DNA of 64,000 nucleotides from Salpingoeca rosetta (taxonomy: Eukaryota > Protista > Choanoflagellata): positions 193,024 through 257,023 of the forward strand of contig JAWQFM010000025.1 in NCBI GenBank assembly GCA_033442325.1. Reading direction: 5' to 3'. Of this stretch, positions 5,447 to 43,689 are shown piece by piece (positions within the stretch are counted from its first letter, which is position 1; each line of letters starts with the position of its first letter). Made by a program: the position numbers and the translations under genes. Below the pieces are notes generated by a model. That model searched no databases and was not told where the DNA came from. It saw only the letters and a program-made list of their open reading frames with translations.

Positions 5447-6712
5447 ATGGACCAGTTGCTGCTGCCGATGATCGAGGATGATGGCGGCGCGGAGGAGGTG
5501 CTGAGCGAGCTCTGGACCATCCGCGGACCGCCGCTGTACCGCGGGTACCCTGGAAGCGCGGCAGCACTGAAGCAGGAGGCCCGGGATGTTCTCGCCAACA
5601 GTACGTTTCGGAAAAAGTGCAGGCAGATTGGCGTCGGCGCCACCACCCACCGATTACGCATCGTCAGGCAATCGGGCCTCCCGCCCATGCGCGTGCTGCC
5701 TGCTGCATGGCTCAAGGCACGGAACGGCGCGTGCCGCATCCCACGGAGCCACGAGGGCCTCACCGTCGACGCGGAACAGGCCGTGTGCATCGCCAGCATC
5801 AGCAAGTGTCGCCCCGTCATTGTCATGGTGAGCCACCACCATTTTGGTCCGCACAGCGACAAGCCTGATGACGAGGACAACTCCAACGCAAAGGCGCTCT
5901 TTGAGTTTACGAAATGGCTCGAGTGGCGAATCCGCATCAAAGGCGTCACGGGCGTGCCCAAGAGCAAGCACCCGCTCATCTTCTTGTGGATCGACTGGCC
6001 CTGTATCGATCAAGGACCCGACATCCCCGAGACAGAGGAGAGCATGCCGCAGCTCATGGAAGCACGTGCGCCGTACATTGAGTCGCTCAGCGTGTACACG
6101 GCGTGCTGCCACCTGACGGCGTGCATCGAGGGCGTGGACACAGACGACCACGACAGCGACCCATGGTGCCTGGTGCAGCGCATTGCCGCCTACGTGTACA
6201 TCCCGAACGGGCAAATGCCCTTTATCGTGCAGACCGGGTTTGTGCATCAGCAGCAGATTCCGGCCAAAGGCAGGCGCAGCCTCATCGACCCACTGGAGCA
6301 CCTCGACAATGCAAGCGCGCACGATGCGCCGTACATCCAGCACCTCACACAGGCGCTCATGAGGTCCGCCACCATTGTCACGCGACCAGAGACAAACAGC
6401 GACAACTTATGCGCGGAGTGCCTTCGCGCGCACCCGACACCGCTTGCCTGGGCGCTGTGCATGACCCTGTGTCTCGGCGGGATTTGTGACGTGGGTGTCG
6501 CCAACGTGTGCCAGAGCTGCTGCAGCCCCTGCGCGCGGTTCCAGTCGCTTCAGGCGGGAAACGCGTTCCCCGTGCTTGAGCTTCGCGCAGACACGGTGAT
6601 GATGCAGGAGCCGATGGGCGACGACGGCGACGAGGATGACCTGGTGGTGATCAACCTGGCCGGCAGCAGATTCGGCAGCAGGCACCACCACACCGGCGAG
6701 GCGGACGCATGA
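5447..6712 (+). CDS. Intronless HET(TIR-like)-domain protein with Cys-rich hydrophobic C-terminus, paralog A (degenerate motifs)
   Basis: ATG 5447 follows a (CA)n run. Motifs VMVSHHH, IFLWIDWPCIDQ, YIESLSVY and DSDPWCLVQ match the HET pattern SHxW / WID..C.Q / RxWxxxE but with substitutions. Clear paralog of 7995-9344. Confidence 0.75.
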   Translation: MDQLLLPMIEDDGGAEEVLSELWTIRGPPLYRGYPGSAAALKQEARDVLANSTFRKKCRQIGVGATTHRLRIVRQSGLPPMRVLPAAWLKARNGACRIPRSHEGLTVDAEQAVCIASISKCRPVIVMVSHHHFGPHSDKPDDEDNSNAKALFEFTKWLEWRIRIKGVTGVPKSKHPLIFLWIDWPCIDQGPDIPETEESMPQLMEARAPYIESLSVYTACCHLTACIEGVDTDDHDSDPWCLVQRIAAYVYIPNGQMPFIVQTGFVHQQQIPAKGRRSLIDPLEHLDNASAHDAPYIQHLTQALMRSATIVTRPETNSDNLCAECLRAHPTPLAWALCMTLCLGGICDVGVANVCQSCCSPCARFQSLQAGNAFPVLELRADTVMMQEPMGDDGDEDDLVVINLAGSRFGSRHHHTGEADA

Positions 6713-7467
6713 AGAGGGGGGGGGGGGGTTAAGGGGTGGCTGAGTTGTGAATGGGAAAGGTGAGGAAGGCCAGAGGAGATTTGGGTGCGTAGGGATGGGT
6801 GCGTGCGTGGAAGGGGGGGGGGGGAAGGAGGATTGGAGGGAGAGCATGCGCTGGTGGTCGGTGGGTACGGGGGGAGGGGGAAGGGAGACGACGTAGGACA
6901 TGCACGCGTGCGCTGTCTTTTGTTTGAGGTGACGATTATTGTGTTGCACATTATTGTCTCGTGTGTCTGTATTGTTTGTACAATTTGTTCTTTGCTTGCT
7001 TTAGTTTGCCTTTGTGCTGAGATACACAGTATTTTTAAGTGGGTTGTGTGTGTGTGGTGTGTGTGTCAGAGGCTATGAGACACGAGCACACACAACGCGC
7101 TGGGGGATGGGGGGGGGGGCTTTCAGGTATAAGGTATTATTGCCTGCTTGCTTACTTGCCTGCTTGCTTGCTTGCCCTCTTGTCTGCTTGCTTGCTTGCT
7201 TGTCTGCTTGCTCGCTCGCTTGCTTGCTTGCCTGCCTGCGTGCGTCTTTCCTTGTCTCGGTTCTTCAGTTGTCTCAGCAGATGCGACCAGTGACTTGTCG
7301 CTCTGCAAGCAAGACTACATTTTGCACTTTTGCACTTTTATTGTTGTTTAGTTTGATTCCACGCACGCATAATGTGGTGGCGACGTGCAGGCCTGCTGGA
7401 CAATCTTGCCACCGCTGGGTGGGCAAAATTGCCCATTTGGTTGGGAAGGGTGGATTTGGCGTGAATT

Positions 7468-7760
7468 TTCTGGGGGGCGACACTGACCCGCGAAAATTTT
7501 GAACCTTGACCATGACCAATTTGCGTGTTGTGGGTCAGGTCAAGCGCTGGCTTGAGTTGGGTGGTGGGAGAATTTCGGGATTGATGGGAGAGGGATTTGA
7601 ACACACCATATCGTGCAGTGAGATTCCACGGGCTCCATACAGAAACACCACATAGTGTAGTGAAAGGTGGAAAGTTGTGAAAGATCCCTGACCACGACCA
7701 ATCTGACTGCCCGTGGTCGGGTCATTTGAAATTTTCGCGGGTTAGTGTCACCCCCCAGAA
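7468..7760. repeat. Imperfect 32-bp inverted repeat bracketing ~230 bp with internal hairpins (MITE-like or regulatory)
   Basis: ttctggggggcgacactgacccgcgaaaattt (7468-7499) versus the reverse complement of aaattttcgcgggttagtgtcaccccccagaa (7729-7760): 2 mismatches. Confidence 0.75.
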
Positions 7761-7994
7761 TTTTGTTGTGCTGCAAAGTTGCGCGTCCTTGCTCCTTGCT
7801 CTTTGTTTGTGTTGTTGTTGTTTGCATCTGGCTGGTGTTTTGCTTGTGTTGGTTTGCTCCAACCAAGGCATTCATTTCGCCTTTCCATCCCCCTCACACG
7901 ACGACACGACATCACCCGCTGGCTCAAGCTCACCAGCCATCTTACTGCAGCCCTCCAGAGAGAGCCACCACCCAGACCTACCTTTCGCTTCGCC

Positions 7995-9344
7995 ATGAGT
8001 TCAACGCTGCAACAGCCGCTGCTTCCTCTGCACTCGGACAAGGATGGCGCCGTCGAGGACTTTGGGCGCGCAAGGAGAGCTCTTCTGCCTGAAACAGTCG
8101 CACTTGCCGACCTGTGGACAACGCGTGGGCCACCACAGTACTGCGGGTTGTCTGGTGGCGCCCAAGCTTTGAAAGAGAGGGTCAGCAGCGTGCTCAAGAA
8201 CTGGAAGTTTCAAGCAAAGTGCCGGCAGATTGGCGCTAACCCCACGCTTCAGCGATTGCGGATTGTGAAGCAATCGGGCCTCCCGCCCATGCGCGTGCTG
8301 CCTGCTGCATGGCTCAAGGCACGGAACGGCGCGTGCCGCATCCCACGGAGCCACGAGGGCCTCACCGTCGACGCGGAACAGGCCGTGTGTACCTCAATTG
8401 TGAACAAGTGCCGTCCCGTCATTGTCATGGTGAGCCATCGCTGGCTTGACCCAGACAATCACAGGCCCGATGACGAGGACAACTCCAAGGCAAAGGCGCT
8501 CTTTGAGTTTACGAAATGGCTCGAGTGGAAGATTCAACGCGATGATGTGACTGGGGTGCCCAAGAGCCAGCACCCACTCATTTTCTTGTGGATTGACTGG
8601 GCATGTATCAACCAGGGCGATGACATTCCCGAAACAGAGGAGAACATGCCACAACTCATGAAAGCGCGTGCACCATACATAGATTCGCTCAGCGTGTACA
8701 CAGCTTGTTGCCATCTGGTGACATGCTTCGAAGGGGCTGGCCCTGATGACTACGGCAGCAGACCATGGTGTCTGGTGGAGCGCATTGCTGCGTACGTGTA
8801 CATTCCAAACGGGCAGCTGCCATTTATTGTGCAAGATGGGTTTGTGCATCAGCAGCAACTCCCTACCAGATCGAAGCGTGAGGTCATTGACCCATTGCAG
8901 TATCTCGATAAGGCGAACGAGCACGATGCACCCCACATCAGAGATCTCACTGCAGCGCTACTTGGCCGTCGACAGCTGATCGTTCGACCACCTTGTAACA
9001 GCGATTCATGGTGTTTTGAGTGCTTGCGCGCACACCCGTCCGCTATGCTAGCGTGTGCTTGTTTTGTGGTCTCTGCGCCCTTTGGAGGTGGTGTTGTTTT
9101 CATGCCATGTGTGCTCAGGGGTGTGAACGTCTCAACGGTTCGAATCGGAGCAACCATCACAGCACTCGAACTTCGCGCCGATTCCGTCGTGACCGAAGCA
9201 CCGACGAGCGACGAACAAGACGAGGACACTGTCGTCTTCGATTACAAGCGAGGCGACGACGAGGACGAGCAACGGGAAGAGACCATTGATCAGGTTGACC
9301 CGGAATGCCGGGAATACAGGGAGGTGGATGTTCAAGTTGTCTGA
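7995..9344 (+). CDS. Intronless HET(TIR-like)-domain protein with Cys-rich hydrophobic C-terminus, paralog B (intact motifs)
   Basis: ATG 7995; motifs VMVSHRWL..PD, IFLWIDWACINQ, YIDSLSVY and YGSRPWCLVE are the canonical HET-like set; hydrophobic segment AMLACACFVVSAPFGGGVVFMPCVL; acidic tail. Confidence 0.8.
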   Translation: MSSTLQQPLLPLHSDKDGAVEDFGRARRALLPETVALADLWTTRGPPQYCGLSGGAQALKERVSSVLKNWKFQAKCRQIGANPTLQRLRIVKQSGLPPMRVLPAAWLKARNGACRIPRSHEGLTVDAEQAVCTSIVNKCRPVIVMVSHRWLDPDNHRPDDEDNSKAKALFEFTKWLEWKIQRDDVTGVPKSQHPLIFLWIDWACINQGDDIPETEENMPQLMKARAPYIDSLSVYTACCHLVTCFEGAGPDDYGSRPWCLVERIAAYVYIPNGQLPFIVQDGFVHQQQLPTRSKREVIDPLQYLDKANEHDAPHIRDLTAALLGRRQLIVRPPCNSDSWCFECLRAHPSAMLACACFVVSAPFGGGVVFMPCVLRGVNVSTVRIGATITALELRADSVVTEAPTSDEQDEDTVVFDYKRGDDEDEQREETIDQVDPECREYREVDVQVV

Positions 9345-35145: not shown

Positions 35146-37346
35146 CACACACACGCACACAAACCGCAGCATACTTGGTTGATGACGTCGTGACGTGAGA
35201 GCTTTGCGGCCTGCGCCAGCTTGCCAAACAAGGGCAACTTTGAGAGTTGAGTGACATCGACACGCACTGTGCTCGCAGGCGCTGTGAATACGGTGTAAAG
35301 TCGCACATCAAACACGGCCTTTGCCTGTTGTGTCGTGCATGAAATCGTCACCTCCAGCCGCTTCCCACCGTCAAGAAGCACAGGCGTGAACTTGCGCTTG
35401 TGGCCATCAAGGGAGCTTGTCACGTGCGTGACAAACGCAAACCCGTCGCCAGTGAATGTGAGATGGTGCTGTTGGCTGTTGGCTGTCAATGTCGTGCTCG
35501 AGTGGTCTGACTGGAACATCAACTTCCGAGGGGCGGAGAAGTCGGGATGCTGGGTGAATGTTGGGATTCGGGGTGTTTGCTGCGGATACCATGCATGCCG
35601 ATTCAAGTGGTGGCCCTGGCAATAGTGGTCCAGAAGATGGTTTTTGAGGAGCTCGGCCTTCAGCTGCGGAAGTGTGTGTGTCTTGAACAAAGCGGCATGA
35701 ATCTCATTTGGGTTGTTGTATGGATTCCATTTTGAGTCCTCAAAAATCAGGTACGTGCCAAAGGGCGAATAGTCACTCTGCATGCTTTGGCTCGCAAGGA
35801 AGCCAAGGTACCTTGCAAGTGTCATCCAAAGGCTCCCCTTCGCGTTTTGCGAAATGACAGATGTAAGGCTGCCGAAGAATGAGCTGCGGCTCTCTGGCTG
35901 GCTGAAGGCCTTGTTGAGAACTTGCGCGACAAGTGATGACCTCTTAGAAGCGTCTGCTTGGGAGCTGAATGCACGCGTGAGCATGGTCAGCACGCGTGGG
36001 ACAATGTCGTTGCTGTACACGTGGAACCGGCAGTTGCTGTGAGCCACGCCAGCACCACCAATCTCCCGCTCAAACTGCTGCGCGAAAGCCCTGTCTCCGA
36101 CAAGAGGTGCGCCAAACGTCACCACGTGCACGTTTCTGCGGTCGTCGTGCTGGTGGCACTCAAGCAGCACGCGCAACGCCACCAGCTGTGCCAGCGCACC
36201 GCCGAGCGAGTGGCCGCAGAACACCAAGCGGTACTTCTTCTTGTCACCTGGACTCCCGTGGAGCAACCGCACAAATGGCTCGACGGGGATCTTCTCAGCC
36301 ACGCGAAGAAAGCCCAGATGCACGCGGCCCTCGATGGCCTCGCTCATTGGAGGGACGGCAAACGCCGTCATGTCCGTCATGGCGTGTTGCAGCGTCTGCG
36401 TGCTCTGGAAGCAGATGTACACGGGGGTCGTGTCTTCGCCGTTGAGCGGATCGTCGCTGCCAAACGCGACGATGAAGTGGTGGCTTTCAGCGGCATTGCG
36501 TGTGAAGGCAATCTCCTTCAGCTGGTGGTATCCGTCGCGCTTGTCGAGGTTTTGGTTGAAATGCCGTTGAATTGCCACTTCTTGATTGCTGCCCCCGTTG
36601 CTCAGGCATTGCGCCAACAGGAGACACATGTCGGTGTCTCGACGGCGTATGACATCTGGAGGTAGCCTGGGCGCGTGTTGGAACACAAGCGTCGCAGGAT
36701 GGCCTCGGACTAACACACAGGTGTACAAGCAGCGCCATTGTGAGCGCGTCAAGCAGGCTGAACTTGGGCTGGTGGTAGGGAGGTGTCGGTGACGGTTCAT
36801 AACGTGGGTTGTTGGGGGGAGAGGCAGCACGATGAGGCGTCAGTAAGCATGAGATGAGCAACAATTGACTTACGCCTCTGCGCAAAGGTTTGGTCCATGA
36901 GACGGGCGGGAGTCACTGGTTGTGGGATCACCAAAGATGTCACAGTGTCATCTCCAACCGGAGGTACCTCTGTTGTCTCCACAACGTCGGCTGCAACAAC
37001 TTCTGCGAGGACATGGCCGCACCGCACGCCTTCTTCAAACAGCCTTGAGCCTACCAAAGCAAGTGCCCAAGAGGAGTGCGTACGTGAGCAGAGAGAAGTG
37101 TGTACGTGAGTGCGCGGACACAAGCCAAAAGACACGACACAAGGGACGAAGGGATACAAACAGACATGGGTCGGTGGAGGCGTTGGCGTAAACCTGCACA
37201 CATTCAGCAAGCAGTGGTGTACCTTGATGACAGAATGAGACGACATGTCGCTCGCCGTCCCGCATCAGGCCAAACGTCGACACTGCCTGCTGCAGGTCGT
37301 TCACTGTCACTGTCACCTGCGTCACAGTCGCTCTGGTGGTGGACAT
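31697..37346 (-). CDS. Spliced Lipase_3 + TM segments + C-terminal GTPase fusion protein, copy 2
   Basis: ATG 37346 with phase-compatible exons. Lipase motifs GRVHLGF, LVFCGHSLGGALAQL, VVTFGAPLVGD, NDIVPR and NHLLDHY. Hydrophobic hairpin GIVALTTAITIIMAGLAFFSLGGLFAGIYFLF..SIAAFLLAGVLG. GTPase motifs GVVGTSKTGK|STF, FVDFPG, IFVVEAD and VPILLCLNKAD. Stop at 31697. Confidence 0.85.
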
Positions 37347-37443
37347 GACGCTGTTTGTTTGTTTGGGTGTGAAGTTCGGAAAATTGGTTTTATTTTCCGT
37401 GAATAATCGGCAATCTGCGACAGTGCGCACACCAAACGCGACG

Positions 37444-40227
<2,784 letters not shown>

Positions 40228-40783: not shown

Positions 40784-43101
40784 TCACCCCGCAGAGGCTG
40801 GGGACGTGTGTGCATGCAGTGTTGAGCAGAGGAAGCGCAGGATCAAGTTGCGACGCGTTGAAGAGGATTGGTGGGCTACTTGAGCGGAGATGAAACGGAG
40901 CAGGGGGTTGCGCTGTACTGGGGAGTGTTGCTGCTGTTGTCCAGAGGGAGTTGGGGTAGACTGGTGTTGTGAAACTTGACGAATGAATTCCTGCAGACGC
41001 AGTGCAAGTAAATTCTGCTGCCCATCTTTGGTGTGTGGGTGGTCTGGGCCAAGCGTGTCCATCAAGATATCGACAGCTCGTTGCATCAACTGTTTTGCGC
41101 GGGCATAGTCGCACTTGCTGTAGTACACCCCACCCAGGTTGTTGTATGTGGTTGCTGTGTCTGGATGCTTCTCCCCCAACGTGTCCAGGCGGATCTGCAG
41201 GCTCTTCTGGTAGTAGTGGATGGCGCGGTCATACTCCCCCTTGCTGTTGTACACCCCGCCCAGGTTGCCGTATGTGGTTGCTGTGGACGGATGCTTCTCC
41301 CCCAACGTGTCCAGTGTAATGTTCAAATCCTTCTGGTAGTACTCCAGAGCACGGTCATACTCCCCCTTGCTCCTGTACACCTGGCCCAGGTTGTTGTATG
41401 TGGTTGCTGTGTCTGGGTGCTTCTCCCCCAACGTGTCCAGCTTGATCTGCAGGCTCTTCTCATAGTAGTGGATGGCACGGTCATACTCCCCCTTGCTGTT
41501 GTACACCTGACCCAGGTTGTTGTATGTGGTTGCTGTGTCTGGGTGTTTCTCCCCCAACGTGTCCAGCTTGATCTGCAGGCTCTTCTGGTAGTAGTGGGTG
41601 GCGAGGTCATAGTCGCCCTTGCTCTTGTACACCTGACCCAGGTTGCCGTATGTGGTTGCCGTGTGTGGATGCTTCTCCCCCAACGTGTCCAGCTGTATCT
41701 GCAGGCACTTCTCATAGTAGTGGATGGCACGGTCATAGTCGCCCTTGCTCCTGTACACCTGGCCCAGGTTGCCACATGTGGTTGCTGTGGACGGATGCTT
41801 CTCCCCCAACGTGTCCAGCTGTATCTGCAGGCACTTCTCGAAGTACGCCAGAGCGCGGTCATAGTCGCCCTTGCTCTCATACACTTGACCCAGGTTGTTG
41901 TATGTGCCTGCCGTGTGTGGATGCTTCTCCCCCAACGTGTCCAGCTGTATCTGCAGGCACTTCTCATAGTAGTGGATGGCGCGGTCATAGTCGCCCTTGC
42001 TGTAGTACACCTGACCCAGGTTGTTGTGTATGGTTGCTGTGGATGGATGCTTCTCCCCCCACGTGTCGAGGTAGATCTGCAGGCTCTGTTGGCAGTACTC
42101 CAGAGCACGGTCATACTCACCCATGCTGCAGTGCACCCCGCCCAGGTTGTTGTACGTTCTTGCTGTCTCTGCGTGTTTCTCCCCCAAGGTGTCCAGCTGT
42201 ATCTGCAGGCACTTGTCATAATAGTGAATGGCACGGTCATAGTCGCACTTGCTGCAGTACACGTGACCCAGGTTGTTGTATGTGGTTGCCGTGTGTGGAT
42301 GCTTCTCCTCCAACGTGTCCAGCTGTATCTGCAGGCACTTCTCATAGTAGTGGATGGCGCGGTCATAGTCGCCCTTGTTGCAGTACACCTGACCCAGGCT
42401 GCTGTATGTGATTGCTGTGGACGGATGCTTCTCCCCCAACGTGTCCAGCGTAATCTTAAAACCCTTCTGGTAGTACTCCAGAGCACGGTCATACTCACCC
42501 ATGCTGTAGTACACACCGCCCAGGTTGCCGTATGTGGTTGCTGTGGACGGATGCTTCTCCCCCAACGTGTTCAGCTCGATATCCAGGCCTCGTTGAAGAA
42601 ACTGCTCCGCTCTTTCATGCTCTCCAAAGTCAAGCATGACCAGTCCAACTCTGTTGCACATGCGTGCAAACTCGGCCGTGCCGTCTTCGCCTCCCATCCC
42701 CATCTCCTCCAAAAATGACTTTGCCATCATCAAACACCAGGCGCGCATCCGTCCTTTCACAGCTCTGTTCACTTCAGGGAAGCCCACAGTGTCCTCAATC
42801 GCCTTGAAGATCATCTCCTTGTCTGCTCGCACACTTGCGCTTGCTTTCCCTGCTTGCACCTCCACCAGCATGTTGGTGATTGCCTTGTGATCTTCAAGCA
42901 AAGCTTCCCTCAGCTTCGTGCGCTGGTGCTGTGGCAGCCTAATCTCCAATCCAACATCGCTTTCTTGGCTGATGGCGCAGAAGATCTCCCACAGACACCA
43001 CGCGCGTGTCAGTGGGACGGGCTTGTTCCACGGCGTCAGCACCAGCAGCACCTTGCCAATGGATGCAATGGCGCTCTTGAACGGGGCCCCAATCCTGCCA
43101 T

Positions 43102-43164
<63 letters not shown>

Positions 43165-43689
43165 AGGTGTCGAGACGAAACGCACACACTGGTGAAGCAA
43201 CCTGACACACACACACACACACACACACACAACTCACTGTTCTGGCGACAGGCCCATGCGCGATTCTGTGTGCTGGTTGTTGCAGAAGAGGTCAAACCAG
43301 AAGAACGTCTCTTGCTTGCTGTGCTTGGTTCCATCTTCATCCTTGTGTTTCTCCTCCTCCTCCTCGTCGTACTCCAGCATGGTGGTGAGGACATCGGAGA
43401 TCTTGTACTTCCAGGCGTGCGACACAAACACGGTGGCTGGTCCCACTTCCTCCGGCTTGGTTCTGCGCAGCAGGTCGATGTACGAACACTTCCATTCCTT
43501 CGTGCGGTGGATCACGGGCTTGACACTCGCATCGTACGTCGTCACCTCCTCGTAGTTGTCGGGGTGATAATCCTTGATCTGCGACATGAACCGCTTGATG
43601 GCAGAGGTGCTCACGCCATCCGTGCAGATGGGCGCTGCTGCTGTTGTGGTGGTTGTGGTGGTTGCAGTTGTTGGCTTTGGCGTGGACAT
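40784..43689 (-). CDS. HET(TIR-like) N-terminal domain + 13 x 42-aa TPR repeats
   Basis: ATG 43689. Exon 1 has TVFVSHAWKY and FFWFDLFCNNQH; after intron(s) at ~43237-43099 come PVPLTRAWCLWEIFCA and ASASVRADKEMIFKAI..GFPEVN, then TPRs of the type ATTYNNLGQVYxSKGDYDRAIHYYEKCLQIxLDTLGEKHPxT. Confidence 0.9.
41030..42666 (-). repeat. 126-bp coding tandem repeat array (TPR, 13 units, high internal identity)
   Basis: On the + strand gcttctcccccaacgtgtccag recurs at 126-bp spacing. Confidence 0.92.

What the first reader, a model, noticed from the sequence alone, without database searches (positions are those of the whole stretch)
40784..43689. HET/TIR-like effector fused directly to a hypervariable TPR array (NLR-like receptor without a NOD)
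Seen: the N-terminal domain has the same motif triad as the pair at 5447-9344 (SHAW; WFDLFCNNQ; TRAWCLWE with intact Glu). It is followed by 13 x 126-bp repeats that are close at DNA level but vary at fixed positions. In repeats 2-13, residue 12 is Y,C,C,C,Y,E,R,K,N,R,N,Y; residue 31 is T,Q,Q,Y,Q,Q,Q,K,K,T,R,L; residue 41 is S/H/E/D; residues 5, 9 and 27 also vary. Half-repeats look shuffled. No NACHT/NB-ARC P-loop is visible. Known: fungal NLRs use high-internal-conservation WD/TPR/ANK repeats with a few diversifying positions, reshuffled by unequal crossover to change specificity. Inference: a two-part sensor-effector immune receptor with a recombination-generated recognition code.
Basis: partly seen in the sequence, partly recalled or inferred. 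Interest (0 to 1): 0.8.

Follow-up and report, generated by a model that had tools for sequence, protein, structure and literature searches.

The report
TIR-like enzyme domain fused to TPRs
This Salpingoeca rosetta (choanoflagellate) gene joins an unannotated domain, which has the fold and key glutamate of NAD-cleaving TIR immune domains, directly to 13 TPR repeats whose differences sit on the predicted ligand-binding stripe; it looks like a switch-less sensor-effector, but its activity, expression and immune role are untested.

Summary
The gene is a two-exon, 920-aa ORF on the minus strand (43689-43238 and 43094-40784) in Salpingoeca rosetta.

- **N-terminal domain.** About 290 aa with no Pfam hit. 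It folds like a TIR domain, and its WCLWE glutamate aligns with the invariant glutamate of canonical TIRs. It does not match Pfam HET.
- **TPR array.** 13 units of 42 aa, kinesin-light-chain type. There is no P-loop or NOD.
- **Variation.** It concentrates at unit positions 12, 31, 41, 27, 5, 9 and 2. Most of these lie on the concave-face stripe of helix A.
- **Selection.** Site dN/dS exceeds 1 only nominally (1.7 at position 12, 1.5 at position 9) and does not survive correction, so diversifying selection is suggested, not shown.
- **Recombination.** Mosaic half-units and a significant recombination test support unequal exchange between units.
- **Family.** At least 62 copies in this genome and about 10,000 protein clusters in protists, mostly joined directly to TPRs.
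- **Expression.** No exact-match RNA reads were found.

The scan had already reported this family from paralogs elsewhere in this genome. Verdict: a real new variant of TIR/HET-repeat sensors; the immune role is inferred.

The parts
43238..43689 (-). Exon 1 (aa 1-150 plus 2 nt). It holds a low-complexity Thr-rich start, the N-terminal helices, strand A (VFVSHAW) and strand B (FWFDLFCNNQ) of the TIR-like domain.
   Evidence: Sequence read. The spliced ORF is 2763 nt and in frame. The same splice is used in the NCBI model of paralog P0001.
43095..43237 (-). Intron of 143 nt (GTGAGT...CAG) filled with (GT)n/(AC)n microsatellite. An intron sits at about the same domain position in 36 of the 37 paralog loci examined.
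   Evidence: Not confirmed by RNA reads for this copy.
40784..43094 (-). Exon 2: the rest of the TIR-like domain, the TPR array, the C-terminal tail and the stop codon (40784-40786).
42677..43617 (-). TIR-like N-terminal domain, aa 25-290, interrupted by the intron. No Pfam family covers it.
   Evidence: The AF2 model of the paralog domain has pLDDT 88.9. Fold matches are mostly TIR domains, then nucleoside 2-deoxyribosyltransferases. hhalign against S. rosetta TIR_2 domains gave P=7.9e-5. No Pfam hit.
43411..43431 (-). Motif 1, VFVSHAW (aa 87-93), predicted strand A.
   Evidence: It aligns with FISHAW of the Paracoccus TIR protein 3h16 and with 'SY.W' of S. rosetta TIRs.
43273..43302 (-). Motif 2, FWFDLFCNNQ (aa 130-139), predicted strand B.
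42986..43009 (-). Motif 3, TRAWCLWE (aa 180-187), at the start of helix C after strand C. The Glu187 codon is 42986-42988. R, W, C and E are invariant across the family.
   Evidence: Invariant columns. The Glu aligns with the only invariant residue of 8 canonical S. rosetta TIR_2 segments.
41030..42667 (-). TPR array of 13 units of 42 aa (126 bp), TPR_12/TPR_10 (kinesin-light-chain) type. Unit 1 (42542-42667) and unit 13 (41030-41155) are divergent end units.
41156..42541 (-). The 11 internal, mutually similar units (units 2-12). Mean nt identity is 82% and the highest pair reaches 94%. Variation is concentrated at unit positions 12, 31, 41, 27, 21, 22, 25, 5, 9 and 2. The units are mosaic (recombinant).
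40787..41029 (-). C-terminal capping helix and an 81-aa Q/S-rich tail. It has no recognised domain and resembles the tail of paralog P0001.

Best explanation
The gene encodes a two-part, switch-less sensor-effector.

**Effector part.** The N-terminal ~290 aa form a divergent TIR-superfamily domain. It has a flavodoxin-like core with an extra helical subdomain. It keeps the 'W-C-x-x-E' glutamate that TIR NADases and nucleoside 2-deoxyribosyltransferases use for catalysis.

**Sensor part.** The C-terminal 13 TPRs of 42 residues form a superhelix. Its concave groove is lined by helix-A positions 41(-2), 2, 5, 9 and 12. These are the positions that differ from unit to unit.

**Most likely mechanism (inferred, not shown).** The TPR groove binds a peptide or protein ligand. 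Binding relieves autoinhibition and/or clusters the TIR-like domains. The clustered domains then cleave NAD(P)+ or a related nucleotide, causing signalling or cell death. The closest parallels are SARM1, bacterial NADase-TPR defence proteins, and TIR/HET-NOD-repeat receptors, except that here there is no NTPase switch.

**Array evolution.** The array changes by unequal crossover or gene conversion between units. This reshuffles the groove residues and changes unit number.

**Context.** The gene is one of at least 62 paralogs in S. rosetta. It belongs to a very large unnamed protist family.
For: **Shown**
- Gene model and intact 920-aa ORF. The same splice is used in the NCBI model of paralog P0001.
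- Confident AF2 model of the domain, pLDDT 88.9. The top Foldseek hits are plant TIR domains (E about 0.035).
- In the Foldseek-independent search, most of the top 30 chains are TIR domains (SARM1 Z 7.0, RPP1 6.7, IL-1RAcPb, MyD88, TIR-1, SpbK, ThsB). Several of the others are 2-deoxyribosyltransferases.
- Profile-profile alignment to canonical S. rosetta TIR_2 domains gave P=7.9e-5. Strands A, B and C are in register, and the WCLWE Glu lies on the invariant TIR Glu.
- TIR_2 is the only Pfam family hit repeatedly, weakly, in 10 of 74 family members. The only PDB sequence hit is the TIR protein 3h16.
- R, W, C and E of motif 3 are invariant in 74 and in 69 diverse members.
- The N-domain is under purifying selection against close paralogs, dN/dS 0.18-0.35.
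- The TPRs are of TPR_12/TPR_10 type and match kinesin light chains and the Podospora 42-residue TPRs.
- The register against consensus TPR shows that unit position 41 equals canonical position 33. In the AF2 array model (pLDDT 89.8), helix A spans positions 40 to 14.
- The seven sites with the highest omega are 12, 9, 31, 2, 13, 41 and 5. Six of them belong to the set 2, 5, 9, 12, 13, 33, 34, which PMC1261162 identifies as the concave, ligand-contacting and most variable TPR positions.
- Recombination is supported.
- 36 of 37 paralog loci examined have 4-16 TPR units directly downstream.
- 54 of 69 top family representatives carry TPR_12, and no NOD family is among the 25 most frequent families listed.
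- The family has 9944 clusters at E<=0.001.

**From the literature**
- HET is TIR-related, and fungal NLR TPRs vary on the concave face and in unit number (PMC4986451).
- A bacterial NOD-less NADase-TPR protein is reported to act in anti-phage defence (bioRxiv 10.1101/2023.05.26.542521).
Against: - No enzymatic, binding or phenotypic data exist.
- Structural Z-scores of 5-7 are in the range the tool warns can reflect a common arrangement only. Foldseek E-values are above 0.01.
- No Pfam TIR or HET model reaches its cut-off.
- Site omega above 1 is not significant after correction. The variable positions are those that vary in TPRs generally and across this family. They therefore show where ligand is probably bound, not that an arms race is under way.
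- No RNA reads matched this copy at 99% or better in two RNA runs, each about 26% sampled. Expression and the splice are therefore unconfirmed here.
- Without a NOD or an obvious oligomerisation module, how the TIR-like domains would be brought together is unknown.
Confidence: 0.5

Rival explanations
1. A non-enzymatic scaffold or adaptor. The TIR-like domain only mediates protein-protein contacts, as in MyD88 or MAL. The TPR array assembles ordinary cellular complexes such as transport or cilium/collar biology, like kinesin light chain or NPHP3. There is no role in non-self recognition.
For: - The TPRs match kinesin light chains and the NPHP3 TPR model.
- Many TIR domains lack catalysis (PMC9153377).
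- Array-wide dN/dS of 0.43 is ordinary.
Against: - The glutamate and the neighbouring Cys, Trp and Arg are invariant across very diverse members. That fits an active site better than a contact surface.
- At least 62 lineage-specific paralogs with changing unit numbers, and variable groove residues, are unusual for housekeeping scaffolds.
Confidence: 0.25
2. The fixed-position variation is neutral. Recent tandem duplication plus concerted evolution homogenises the scaffold. The least constrained surface positions simply drift, so there is no selected 'recognition code'.
For: - No site passes multiple-test correction.
- Most variable sites have omega of 0.8-1.2.
- The same positions are the most variable in all 225 units of the paralog family and in TPRs in general (PMC1261162).
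Against: - Point estimates at positions 12 and 9 exceed 1: omega 1.7 and 1.5. Position 12 also has piN/piS 2.1 within the array.
- Several positions that vary freely family-wide (13, 17, 23, 32, 33, 38) are nearly or fully homogenised in this array. Positions 12, 31 and 41 keep 63-72% of the family entropy. That is a sharper contrast than uniform drift predicts.
Confidence: 0.4
3. This particular copy is silent or decaying: a young pseudogene within an active family.
For: - No exact-match RNA reads were found in two RNA-seq runs. The few reads laid are 95-99% alike and probably come from paralogs.
- No 100%-identical protein appears in the public protein set within the searched length range.
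Against: - The ORF is an uninterrupted 920 aa with canonical splice sites.
- All invariant family residues are intact.
- N-domain dN/dS is 0.18-0.35 against close paralogs.
- Only about a quarter of each RNA run was read, under unknown conditions.
Confidence: 0.12
4. The N-terminal domain is a true member of the fungal-type HET family (PF06985), not a separate TIR-like clade.
For: - The three-block pattern (S-H-x-W; W-x-D-x-x-C-x-x-Q; W-C-L-x-E) parallels the HET blocks.
- HET homologues in choanoflagellates were reported by PSI-BLAST (PMC4986451).
- The nearby pair at 5447-9344 scores HET at E=0.0095, and one member is named a HET-domain protein by UniRef.
Against: - The HET model does not hit this protein or its paralogs. 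It is not among the 25 most frequent families in 74 members even at E<=10, whereas TIR_2 is hit in 10.
- hhalign against the HET-like pair gave only P=0.0087 over two motifs.
Confidence: 0.1

Closest known systems
Fungal HET/NB-ARC or NACHT/TPR (and WD, ANK) NLR-like proteins, e.g. Podospora HET-E family and TPR NLRs (PMC4986451)
   Same: - An N-terminal TIR-related death or effector-type domain.
- C-terminal 42-residue kinesin-light-chain-type TPRs with internally similar units.
- Variation on the concave face.
- Unit shuffling and changes in unit number.
- Large lineage-specific families.
   Different: - There is no NOD/STAND NTPase between the two parts.
- The N-domain does not match the HET model.
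- Internal identity is lower: 82% nt.
- Positive selection and between-strain polymorphism are not shown here.
SARM1 / TIR-1 (ARM-SAM-TIR NADase)
   Same: - A NOD-less protein in which a helical repeat sensor domain is joined to a TIR fold with a catalytic glutamate.
- The SARM1 TIR is among the best structural matches (Z 7.0).
   Different: - The domain order is reversed: here the TIR-like domain is N-terminal.
- The repeats are TPR, not ARM.
- There are no SAM oligomerisation domains.
- SARM1 is a low-copy conserved gene, whereas this is a family of at least 62 copies.
Bacterial BcTpr of the BcTir/Tpr anti-phage system (bioRxiv 10.1101/2023.05.26.542521)
   Same: An N-terminal NAD+ glycosidase domain is fused directly to a C-terminal TPR domain without an NTPase. 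The preprint reports that the TPR part tunes the enzymatic output.
   Different: - It is prokaryotic and encoded in an operon with a separate TIR protein.
- Homology of its N-domain to this one was not tested here.
- A diversified repeat array is not mentioned in the parts of the preprint read here.
Plant TNP (TIR-NBARC-TPR) and TIR-only proteins (PMC9153377)
   Same: - A TIR with a 'W-C-x-x-E'-type catalytic glutamate and neighbouring cysteine.
- TPR as the C-terminal repeat in TNPs.
   Different: - TNPs have an NB-ARC.
- Plant TIRs match the Pfam TIR model, whereas this domain does not reach any cut-off.
Neurospora TOL and other non-NLR HET-domain proteins (PMC10197012; the TOL domain layout is from my own knowledge)
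   Same: A HET/TIR-related domain combined with a repeat or variable region and no NOD, in expanded and variable gene families.
   Different: - They are fungal and true Pfam HET members.
- The repeats are LRR or absent rather than a TPR array.

Membership tests
TIR superfamily (TIR / nucleoside 2-deoxyribosyltransferase-like fold) | Flavodoxin-like alpha/beta core with strand A, helix A, strand B, helix B, strand C, helix C, strand D in that order | tested here: met
   The AF2 model (pLDDT 88.9) has that order of elements. Foldseek top hits are plant TIRs at E about 0.035. In VIA-align, most of the top 30 chains are TIR domains (including ThsB), and several others are 2-deoxyribosyltransferases, at Z 5-7.2. 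The Z values are modest.
TIR superfamily (TIR / nucleoside 2-deoxyribosyltransferase-like fold) | Significant sequence-profile match to a curated TIR model | tested here: inconclusive
   - No Pfam TIR hit for this protein or P0001.
- TIR_2 is hit weakly in 10 of 74 members, best E 0.0027, below the cut-off.
- hhalign against 8 S. rosetta TIR_2 segments gave P=7.9e-5, probability 61%.
- The PDB TIR protein 3h16 scored E=0.34.
TIR superfamily (TIR / nucleoside 2-deoxyribosyltransferase-like fold) | Conserved glutamate after strand C (catalytic in TIR NADases) | tested here: met
   Glu187 of WCLWE is invariant in the family. It aligns with the single invariant residue of the canonical S. rosetta TIR_2 domains.
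TIR superfamily (TIR / nucleoside 2-deoxyribosyltransferase-like fold) | NAD(P)+/nucleotide cleavage that depends on self-association | not testable with these tools
   This needs biochemistry.
HET domain (Pfam PF06985) | Match to the HET profile at or near its cut-off | tested here: not met
   - No HET hit for the two exon products or for spliced homologues at E<=10.
- HET is not among the 25 most frequent families listed for 74 members.
- The whole-genome scan with PF06985 found nothing, but its control also found nothing, so that scan is uninformative.
HET domain (Pfam PF06985) | Three conserved blocks shared with HET and TIR | tested here: met
   The blocks S-H-A-W, W-F-D-L-F-x-N-N-Q and W-C-L-W-E are present. 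They align with blocks 1-2 of the HET-like pair at 5447-9344 only weakly, P=0.0087.
NLR / STAND receptors | Central NACHT or NB-ARC P-loop NTPase between effector and repeats | tested here: not met
   - No Walker A motif.
- No NTPase family in Pfam or NCBIfam.
- The N-domain ends at about aa 290 and the TPRs start at aa 294.
- No NOD family is among the 25 most frequent families listed for 69 relatives.
TPR_12 / TPR_10 (kinesin-light-chain-type, 42-residue TPR) | Tandem 42-residue helix-turn-helix units that match the profiles | tested here: met
   - TPR_12 scored E=2.2e-222 and TPR_10 1.2e-148, with 13 stretches each.
- KLC1/2 scored E 1e-27 to 1e-33, and the Podospora 42-residue TPRs (4y6c, 4y6w) about 1e-21.
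- The AF2 model shows 13 helix pairs plus a capping helix.
Highly internally conserved, diversifying repeat arrays of fungal NLR type | High unit-to-unit identity with unit shuffling | tested here: met
   - Mean identity is 82% nt and 75% aa, with pairs up to 94%. This is at the top of 37 paralog arrays.
- Half-units are mosaic, and the PHI-type test gave P<0.0005.
- Identity is lower than in the classic fungal cases.
Highly internally conserved, diversifying repeat arrays of fungal NLR type | Positive selection at a few concave-face sites | tested here: inconclusive
   Omega is 1.70 at position 12 (P=0.0046 uncorrected) and 1.48 at position 9 (P=0.038). No site is significant after correction for 42 sites. 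The concave-face location is inferred from the register (PMC1261162).
Highly internally conserved, diversifying repeat arrays of fungal NLR type | Repeat-number polymorphism between isolates | not testable with these tools
   Only between-paralog differences were seen: 5, 6, 13 and 16 units in the four closest copies. No second isolate was examined.

The most novel reading that the evidence does not exclude
Choanoflagellates, the sister group of animals, and many other protists may use a very large and so far unnamed class of NTPase-free innate immune receptors. In these, a catalytically active TIR-like NADase would be gated directly by a TPR superhelix. The ligand-binding groove of that superhelix would be diversified in the germline by unequal recombination between units. 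That would be a third architecture for TIR immunity, beside TIR-NLRs and TLR/adaptor TIRs.
Probability: 0.3. Interest if true: 0.8.

Novelty: new variant of a known kind. Interest (0 to 1): 0.62.

Why it matters
TIR domains are the shared currency of immune signalling and cell death in bacteria, plants and animals. How they were wired in the unicellular relatives of animals is poorly known.

- **A hidden family.** Proteins annotated only as 'TPR repeat protein' hide a divergent TIR-type domain with an intact catalytic-type glutamate. The family has about 10,000 clusters at 50% identity, and no Pfam model covers the domain.
- **A different wiring.** Repeats are joined directly to the TIR-like domain without an ATPase switch. 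That differs from the NLR paradigm.
- **A tractable test case.** If the enzyme activity and ligand gating are real, S. rosetta offers a genetically tractable system to study a minimal sensor-effector and the evolution of TIR immunity before animals.
- **What this copy adds.** It has one of the longest and most internally similar arrays in the family and clear recombination signatures. That makes it a good copy for testing repeat-driven changes in specificity.

Tried and rejected
- **Homodimer prediction of the N-domain.** No verdict: score 0.01 against a mark of 0.32. I do not use it as evidence either way.
- **RNA support.** Two raw RNA-seq runs gave only 2 and 8 reads, all 95-99% alike and probably from paralogs. 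There was no splice joint. Expression and the intron of this copy therefore remain unconfirmed. The Logan contigs of X1 and X2 (kind not on record; X1 flagged as probably DNA) hold the sequence exactly.
- **PF06985 scan of the genome.** Nothing was found, but the control genomes also gave nothing, so the scan is uninformative.
- **ESM Atlas search by features.** No usable hit. The search by structure returned only the same unnamed family.
- **PDB sequence searches with the family profiles.** Only chance-level hits, the better one being a TIR protein.
- **Search for relatives of the HET-like pair.** Only the two S. rosetta proteins were found, so I could not build a HET bridge profile.
- **Per-site tests.** The Poisson tests on minimum-event and tree-parsimony counts were not significant after correction. 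Synonymous changes are near saturation on the 32-unit tree, so these tests are weak. codeml and HyPhy were not available.
- **Mapping variable sites onto 3-D coordinates.** The tools return no coordinates. The mapping rests on the register against consensus TPR and on the DSSP helix limits.
Full report
**Organism and gene model**

Relatives of the product are annotated as Salpingoeca rosetta proteins. The window is G000:C25:193024-257023 of a 55.4-Mb assembly in 68 contigs.

The feature is on the minus strand. The ATG is at 43689. The first open frame ends at a GTGAGT donor, so exon 1 is 43689-43238. A 143-nt intron (43237-43095) is almost entirely (GT)n/(AC)n. Exon 2 runs from 43094 to the stop at 40784-40786.

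Splicing gives a 2763-nt ORF of 920 aa. The NCBI model of the close paralog P0001 uses the same junction, '...PEQ|IGAPFK...'. In 36 of the 37 paralog loci examined, an intron sits at about the same domain position.

RNA reads did not confirm the splice for this copy. Two RNA-seq runs gave only a few reads, all 95-99% alike and probably from paralogs.

**Checking the observation**

- **Motifs.** VFVSHAW is aa 87-93, FWFDLFCNNQ aa 130-139 and TRAWCLWE aa 180-187.
- **Repeats.** TRF reports a 126-bp period with 81% matches. Pfam reports 13 TPR_12/TPR_10 stretches at E=2e-222 and 1e-148.
- **No NOD.** There is no Walker A motif and no NTPase family.

Two points need qualifying:

- The units are 82% identical on average at DNA level, range 71-94% among internal units. 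They are similar but not near-identical.
- The pair at 5447-9344 shares only the motif pattern with this gene: 17-18% identity and hhalign P=0.0087.

**The N-terminal domain**

No Pfam or NCBIfam family matches the domain. This holds for the exon products and for correctly spliced homologues at E<=10.

A profile of 19 homologues was searched against 1.84 billion representative proteins. It found 9944 clusters at E<=0.001 and 2110 at E<=1e-30. This is therefore a very large family without a curated model.

An AlphaFold2 model built from that alignment is confident, with pLDDT 88.9 and pTM 0.87. It has an alternating strand-helix core followed by a helical subdomain.

Fold and profile evidence points to TIR:

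- **Foldseek.** The top hits are consistently plant TIR domains (RUN1, SNC1, RPP1, RPV1), but at weak E of about 0.035.
- **Foldseek-independent search.** Among the top 30 chains at Z 5.0-7.2, most are TIR domains: SARM1, RPP1, IL-1RAcPb, MyD88, Hydra TRR-2, TIR-1, SpbK, ThsB, TIRAP, TRAM and TRIF. Several others are nucleoside 2-deoxyribosyltransferases. The tool warns that Z under 8 can reflect a common arrangement. The consistency of the list carries the weight, not the score.
- **Pfam on 74 diverse family members.** TIR_2 is the only family hit repeatedly: 10 members, best E 0.0027, all below the cut-off. HET is not among the listed families.
- **PDB sequence search.** The family profile's only hit is the Paracoccus TIR protein 3h16 at E=0.34. 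It aligns FVSHAW...FWFD with FISHAW...VWYD.
- **Profile-profile comparison.** Against eight canonical TIR_2 segments taken from the S. rosetta genome, hhalign gave P=7.9e-5 and probability 61%. Strands A, B and C are in register. The Glu of WCLWE lies on the only invariant residue of those TIR domains.

That Glu, with the Arg, Trp and Cys before it, is invariant in alignments of 19, 74 and 69 members. Against its closest paralogs the domain has dN/dS of 0.18-0.35, so it is constrained.

I conclude that this is a divergent TIR-superfamily domain with a catalytic-type glutamate. It resembles HET in its three-block pattern. HET has been proposed to be related to TIR, and HET homologues in choanoflagellates were noted in PMC4986451. 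It is not a member of Pfam HET.

**The TPR array**

The array has 13 units of 42 aa at 42667-41030. Unit 1 is a degenerate N-terminal unit and unit 13 is a divergent C-terminal unit.

- **Type.** The units match kinesin light chains at E 1e-27 to 1e-33. They also match the Podospora 42-residue TPR structures 4y6c and 4y6w.
- **Register.** The alignment to consensus TPR shows that unit positions 31-38 are an 8-residue insertion. Positions 39-42 correspond to canonical positions 31-34.
- **Model.** A single-sequence AF2 model has pLDDT 89.8. It shows 13 helix pairs plus a capping helix. Helix A spans positions 40 (of the previous unit) to 14, and helix B spans 17-34.
- **Stripe.** Positions 41, 2, 5, 9 and 12 follow an i, i+3/4 spacing, so they form one stripe on helix A.

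Magliery and Regan (PMC1261162) showed two things. Canonical positions 2, 5, 9, 12, 13, 33 and 34 are the most variable in TPRs and lie on the concave face. Positions 2, 5, 6, 9, 12 and 13 contact ligand.

**How variable is the array, and why**

Entropy among the 12 canonical units (2-13) is highest at positions 12 (2.46 bits), 31 (2.28), 27 (1.95) and 41 (1.86). Positions 21, 22, 25, 5, 9 and 2 follow. Eleven of the 42 positions are invariant among units 2-13.

The selection tests gave these results:

| Test | Result |
|---|---|
| Array-wide dS and dN/dS between units | dS 0.39, dN/dS 0.43, like other paralogs |
| Per-site piN over array-wide piS | 2.1 (pos 12), 1.9 (41), 1.7 (31), 1.4-1.5 (5, 9, 21, 22) |
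| Minimum-event Poisson test, best sites | P=0.04 (31), 0.12 (12) |
| Tree-parsimony counts on 32 units of the same subtype from five paralogs | omega 1.70 (12, P=0.0046), 1.48 (9, P=0.038), 1.15 (31), 0.95 (2), 0.89 (13), 0.87 (41), 0.81 (5); all other sites <=0.64 |

Nothing survives correction for 42 sites. Synonymous change on the 32-unit tree is near saturation.

Six of the seven highest-omega sites belong to the concave set of PMC1261162. All five helix-A members of that set (2, 5, 9, 12, 13) are among the top seven. By my own hypergeometric arithmetic, that has a chance of about 2.5e-5 for a random choice of 7 from 42.

The same positions (12, 2, 9, 31, 13, 5, 41) are also the most variable among 225 units from 36 paralogs. 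They are therefore the family's general specificity or low-constraint sites.

What marks out this array is the contrast within it. Positions 13, 17, 23, 32, 33 and 38 vary freely family-wide but are nearly or fully homogenised here. Positions 12, 31 and 41 keep 63-72% of the family entropy.

My reading: the pattern and its concave-face location are real. Diversifying selection is suggested but not demonstrated.

**Recombination and array dynamics**

- **Identical half-units.** The second halves of units 6 and 8 are identical over 66 nt, and unit 3 is 98% identical there. Their first halves are no more than 90% alike.
- **Mismatched neighbours.** Units 2, 11 and 12 have different nearest neighbours in their two halves.
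- **Half-unit distances.** These correlate only weakly (Mantel r=0.31, P=0.05).
- **Four-gamete test.** 148 of 276 informative site pairs fail it.
- **PHI-type permutation test.** It is significant at P<0.0005.

The four closest copies have exon 1 at 90-93% aa identity. They carry 13 (this gene), 16, 5 and 6 units. The most similar unit pairs here (94%) are at least as close as the paralogs' N-domains, which have dS 0.19-0.44. Units have therefore been gained, lost or exchanged since the gene duplications. Between-isolate polymorphism could not be examined.

**Family context**

Exon 1 has at least 62 matches in the genome.

Of 37 loci examined, 36 have 4-16 TPR units directly downstream, with a median of 7. 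This gene has the second-longest array of the 37. Its mean internal identity ties for highest among arrays of nine or more units, and its closest unit pair (94%) is the highest of all.

Among the family's top representatives, 54 of 69 carry TPR_12. No NOD family is among the 25 most frequent families listed.

Members occur in other choanoflagellates, in transcriptomes of Salpingoeca infusionum and S. punica. By structural search they also occur in oomycetes, haptophytes and green algae.

Earlier follow-ups in this scan reached the same reading on paralogs elsewhere in this genome. One of them covers the 16-18-unit copy that lies 9 kb before this window and is reported there as expressed. I did not test that expression claim.

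**Mechanism**

Shown:

- A constrained TIR-like domain with an invariant catalytic-type Glu.
- A direct fusion to a TPR superhelix.
- Groove-facing variation.
- Recombinant units.
- A large paralog family.

Inferred:

- The groove binds a ligand.
- Binding releases or clusters the TIR-like domains.
- The domains then cleave NAD(P)+ or another nucleotide.

The parallels are SARM1, TIR/HET NLRs, and the bacterial NADase-TPR protein BcTpr (bioRxiv 10.1101/2023.05.26.542521). How oligomerisation would occur without a NOD or SAM module is open. A homodimer prediction gave no verdict, and I do not use it as evidence.

**Comparison and novelty**

- It is not an NLR, because it has no NOD.
- It is not a Pfam HET or TIR member by curated thresholds.
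- It is a TIR-superfamily domain by fold and by the aligned glutamate.
- It works most like a NOD-less relative of fungal HET-NOD-TPR receptors.

I rate it a new variant of a known kind. The domain family has no Pfam model, and its members are annotated only as 'TPR repeat protein' or 'hypothetical protein'. HET-like homologues in choanoflagellates were mentioned in 2014 (PMC4986451). My library searches found no paper describing this TIR-like-TPR family in protists. That is not proof that none exists.

Read laying was given 1201 letters.

Noticed in passing
window 43095-43237; also loci L009-L022, L031-L032, L035-L054: The intron that splits the TIR-like domain lies at about the same domain position in 36 of the 37 paralog loci examined. 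In each paralog inspected by eye it is filled with (GT)n/(AC)n microsatellite. In several copies it stays open in frame, so naive ORF calls read through it as 'CVCVCV...'.
   Followed up: partly
window 45985-49458 (-): The neighbouring 1157-aa ORF has LRR_8/LRR_4 repeats followed by a tyrosine/serine-threonine kinase domain. It is an LRR receptor-kinase-like gene next to the TIR-like-TPR gene.
   Followed up: partly
window 37336-39690 (+): A 784-aa open frame with a long (TH)n run, 'GDVTER' heptad-like repeats and long poly-Q tracts. It has no Pfam family. It may be partly intronic or microsatellite read-through.
   Followed up: no
Pfam HET scores E=0.0095 for one copy and nothing for the other. 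One copy (P0160) is named a heterokaryon incompatibility domain protein by UniRef. The word-based protein search found no relatives beyond these two.
   Followed up: partly
L020 (G000:C4:330100-335600) and L034 (G000:C4:808500-812500): Two arrays 478 kb apart on contig 4 encode identical TPR units, so this is a recent segmental duplication. The open frame that carries the L034 array has no WCLWE motif, so that copy may be truncated.
   Followed up: no
L033 (G000:C3:1832500-1837500): A TPR array in which two consecutive units are identical at protein level and a third differs at 4 of 42 residues. These are very recent unit duplications. The open frame that carries the array lacks the WCLWE motif.
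   Followed up: no
whole genome G000: S. rosetta also has more than 50 six-frame matches to the canonical TIR_2 model, 29 of them above the cut-off. None coincides with the TIR-like-TPR loci.
   Followed up: partly
window 40784-43689: No 100%-identical protein for this gene appeared among public S. rosetta proteins of 423-1345 aa. The gene may be missing, collapsed or modelled differently in the reference annotation.
   Followed up: no
contig C25 of G000: Ten of the 62 N-domain matches lie on this one 1.07-Mb contig. They include two of the three closest paralogs of this gene, at C25:180505 and C25:433568.
   Followed up: no
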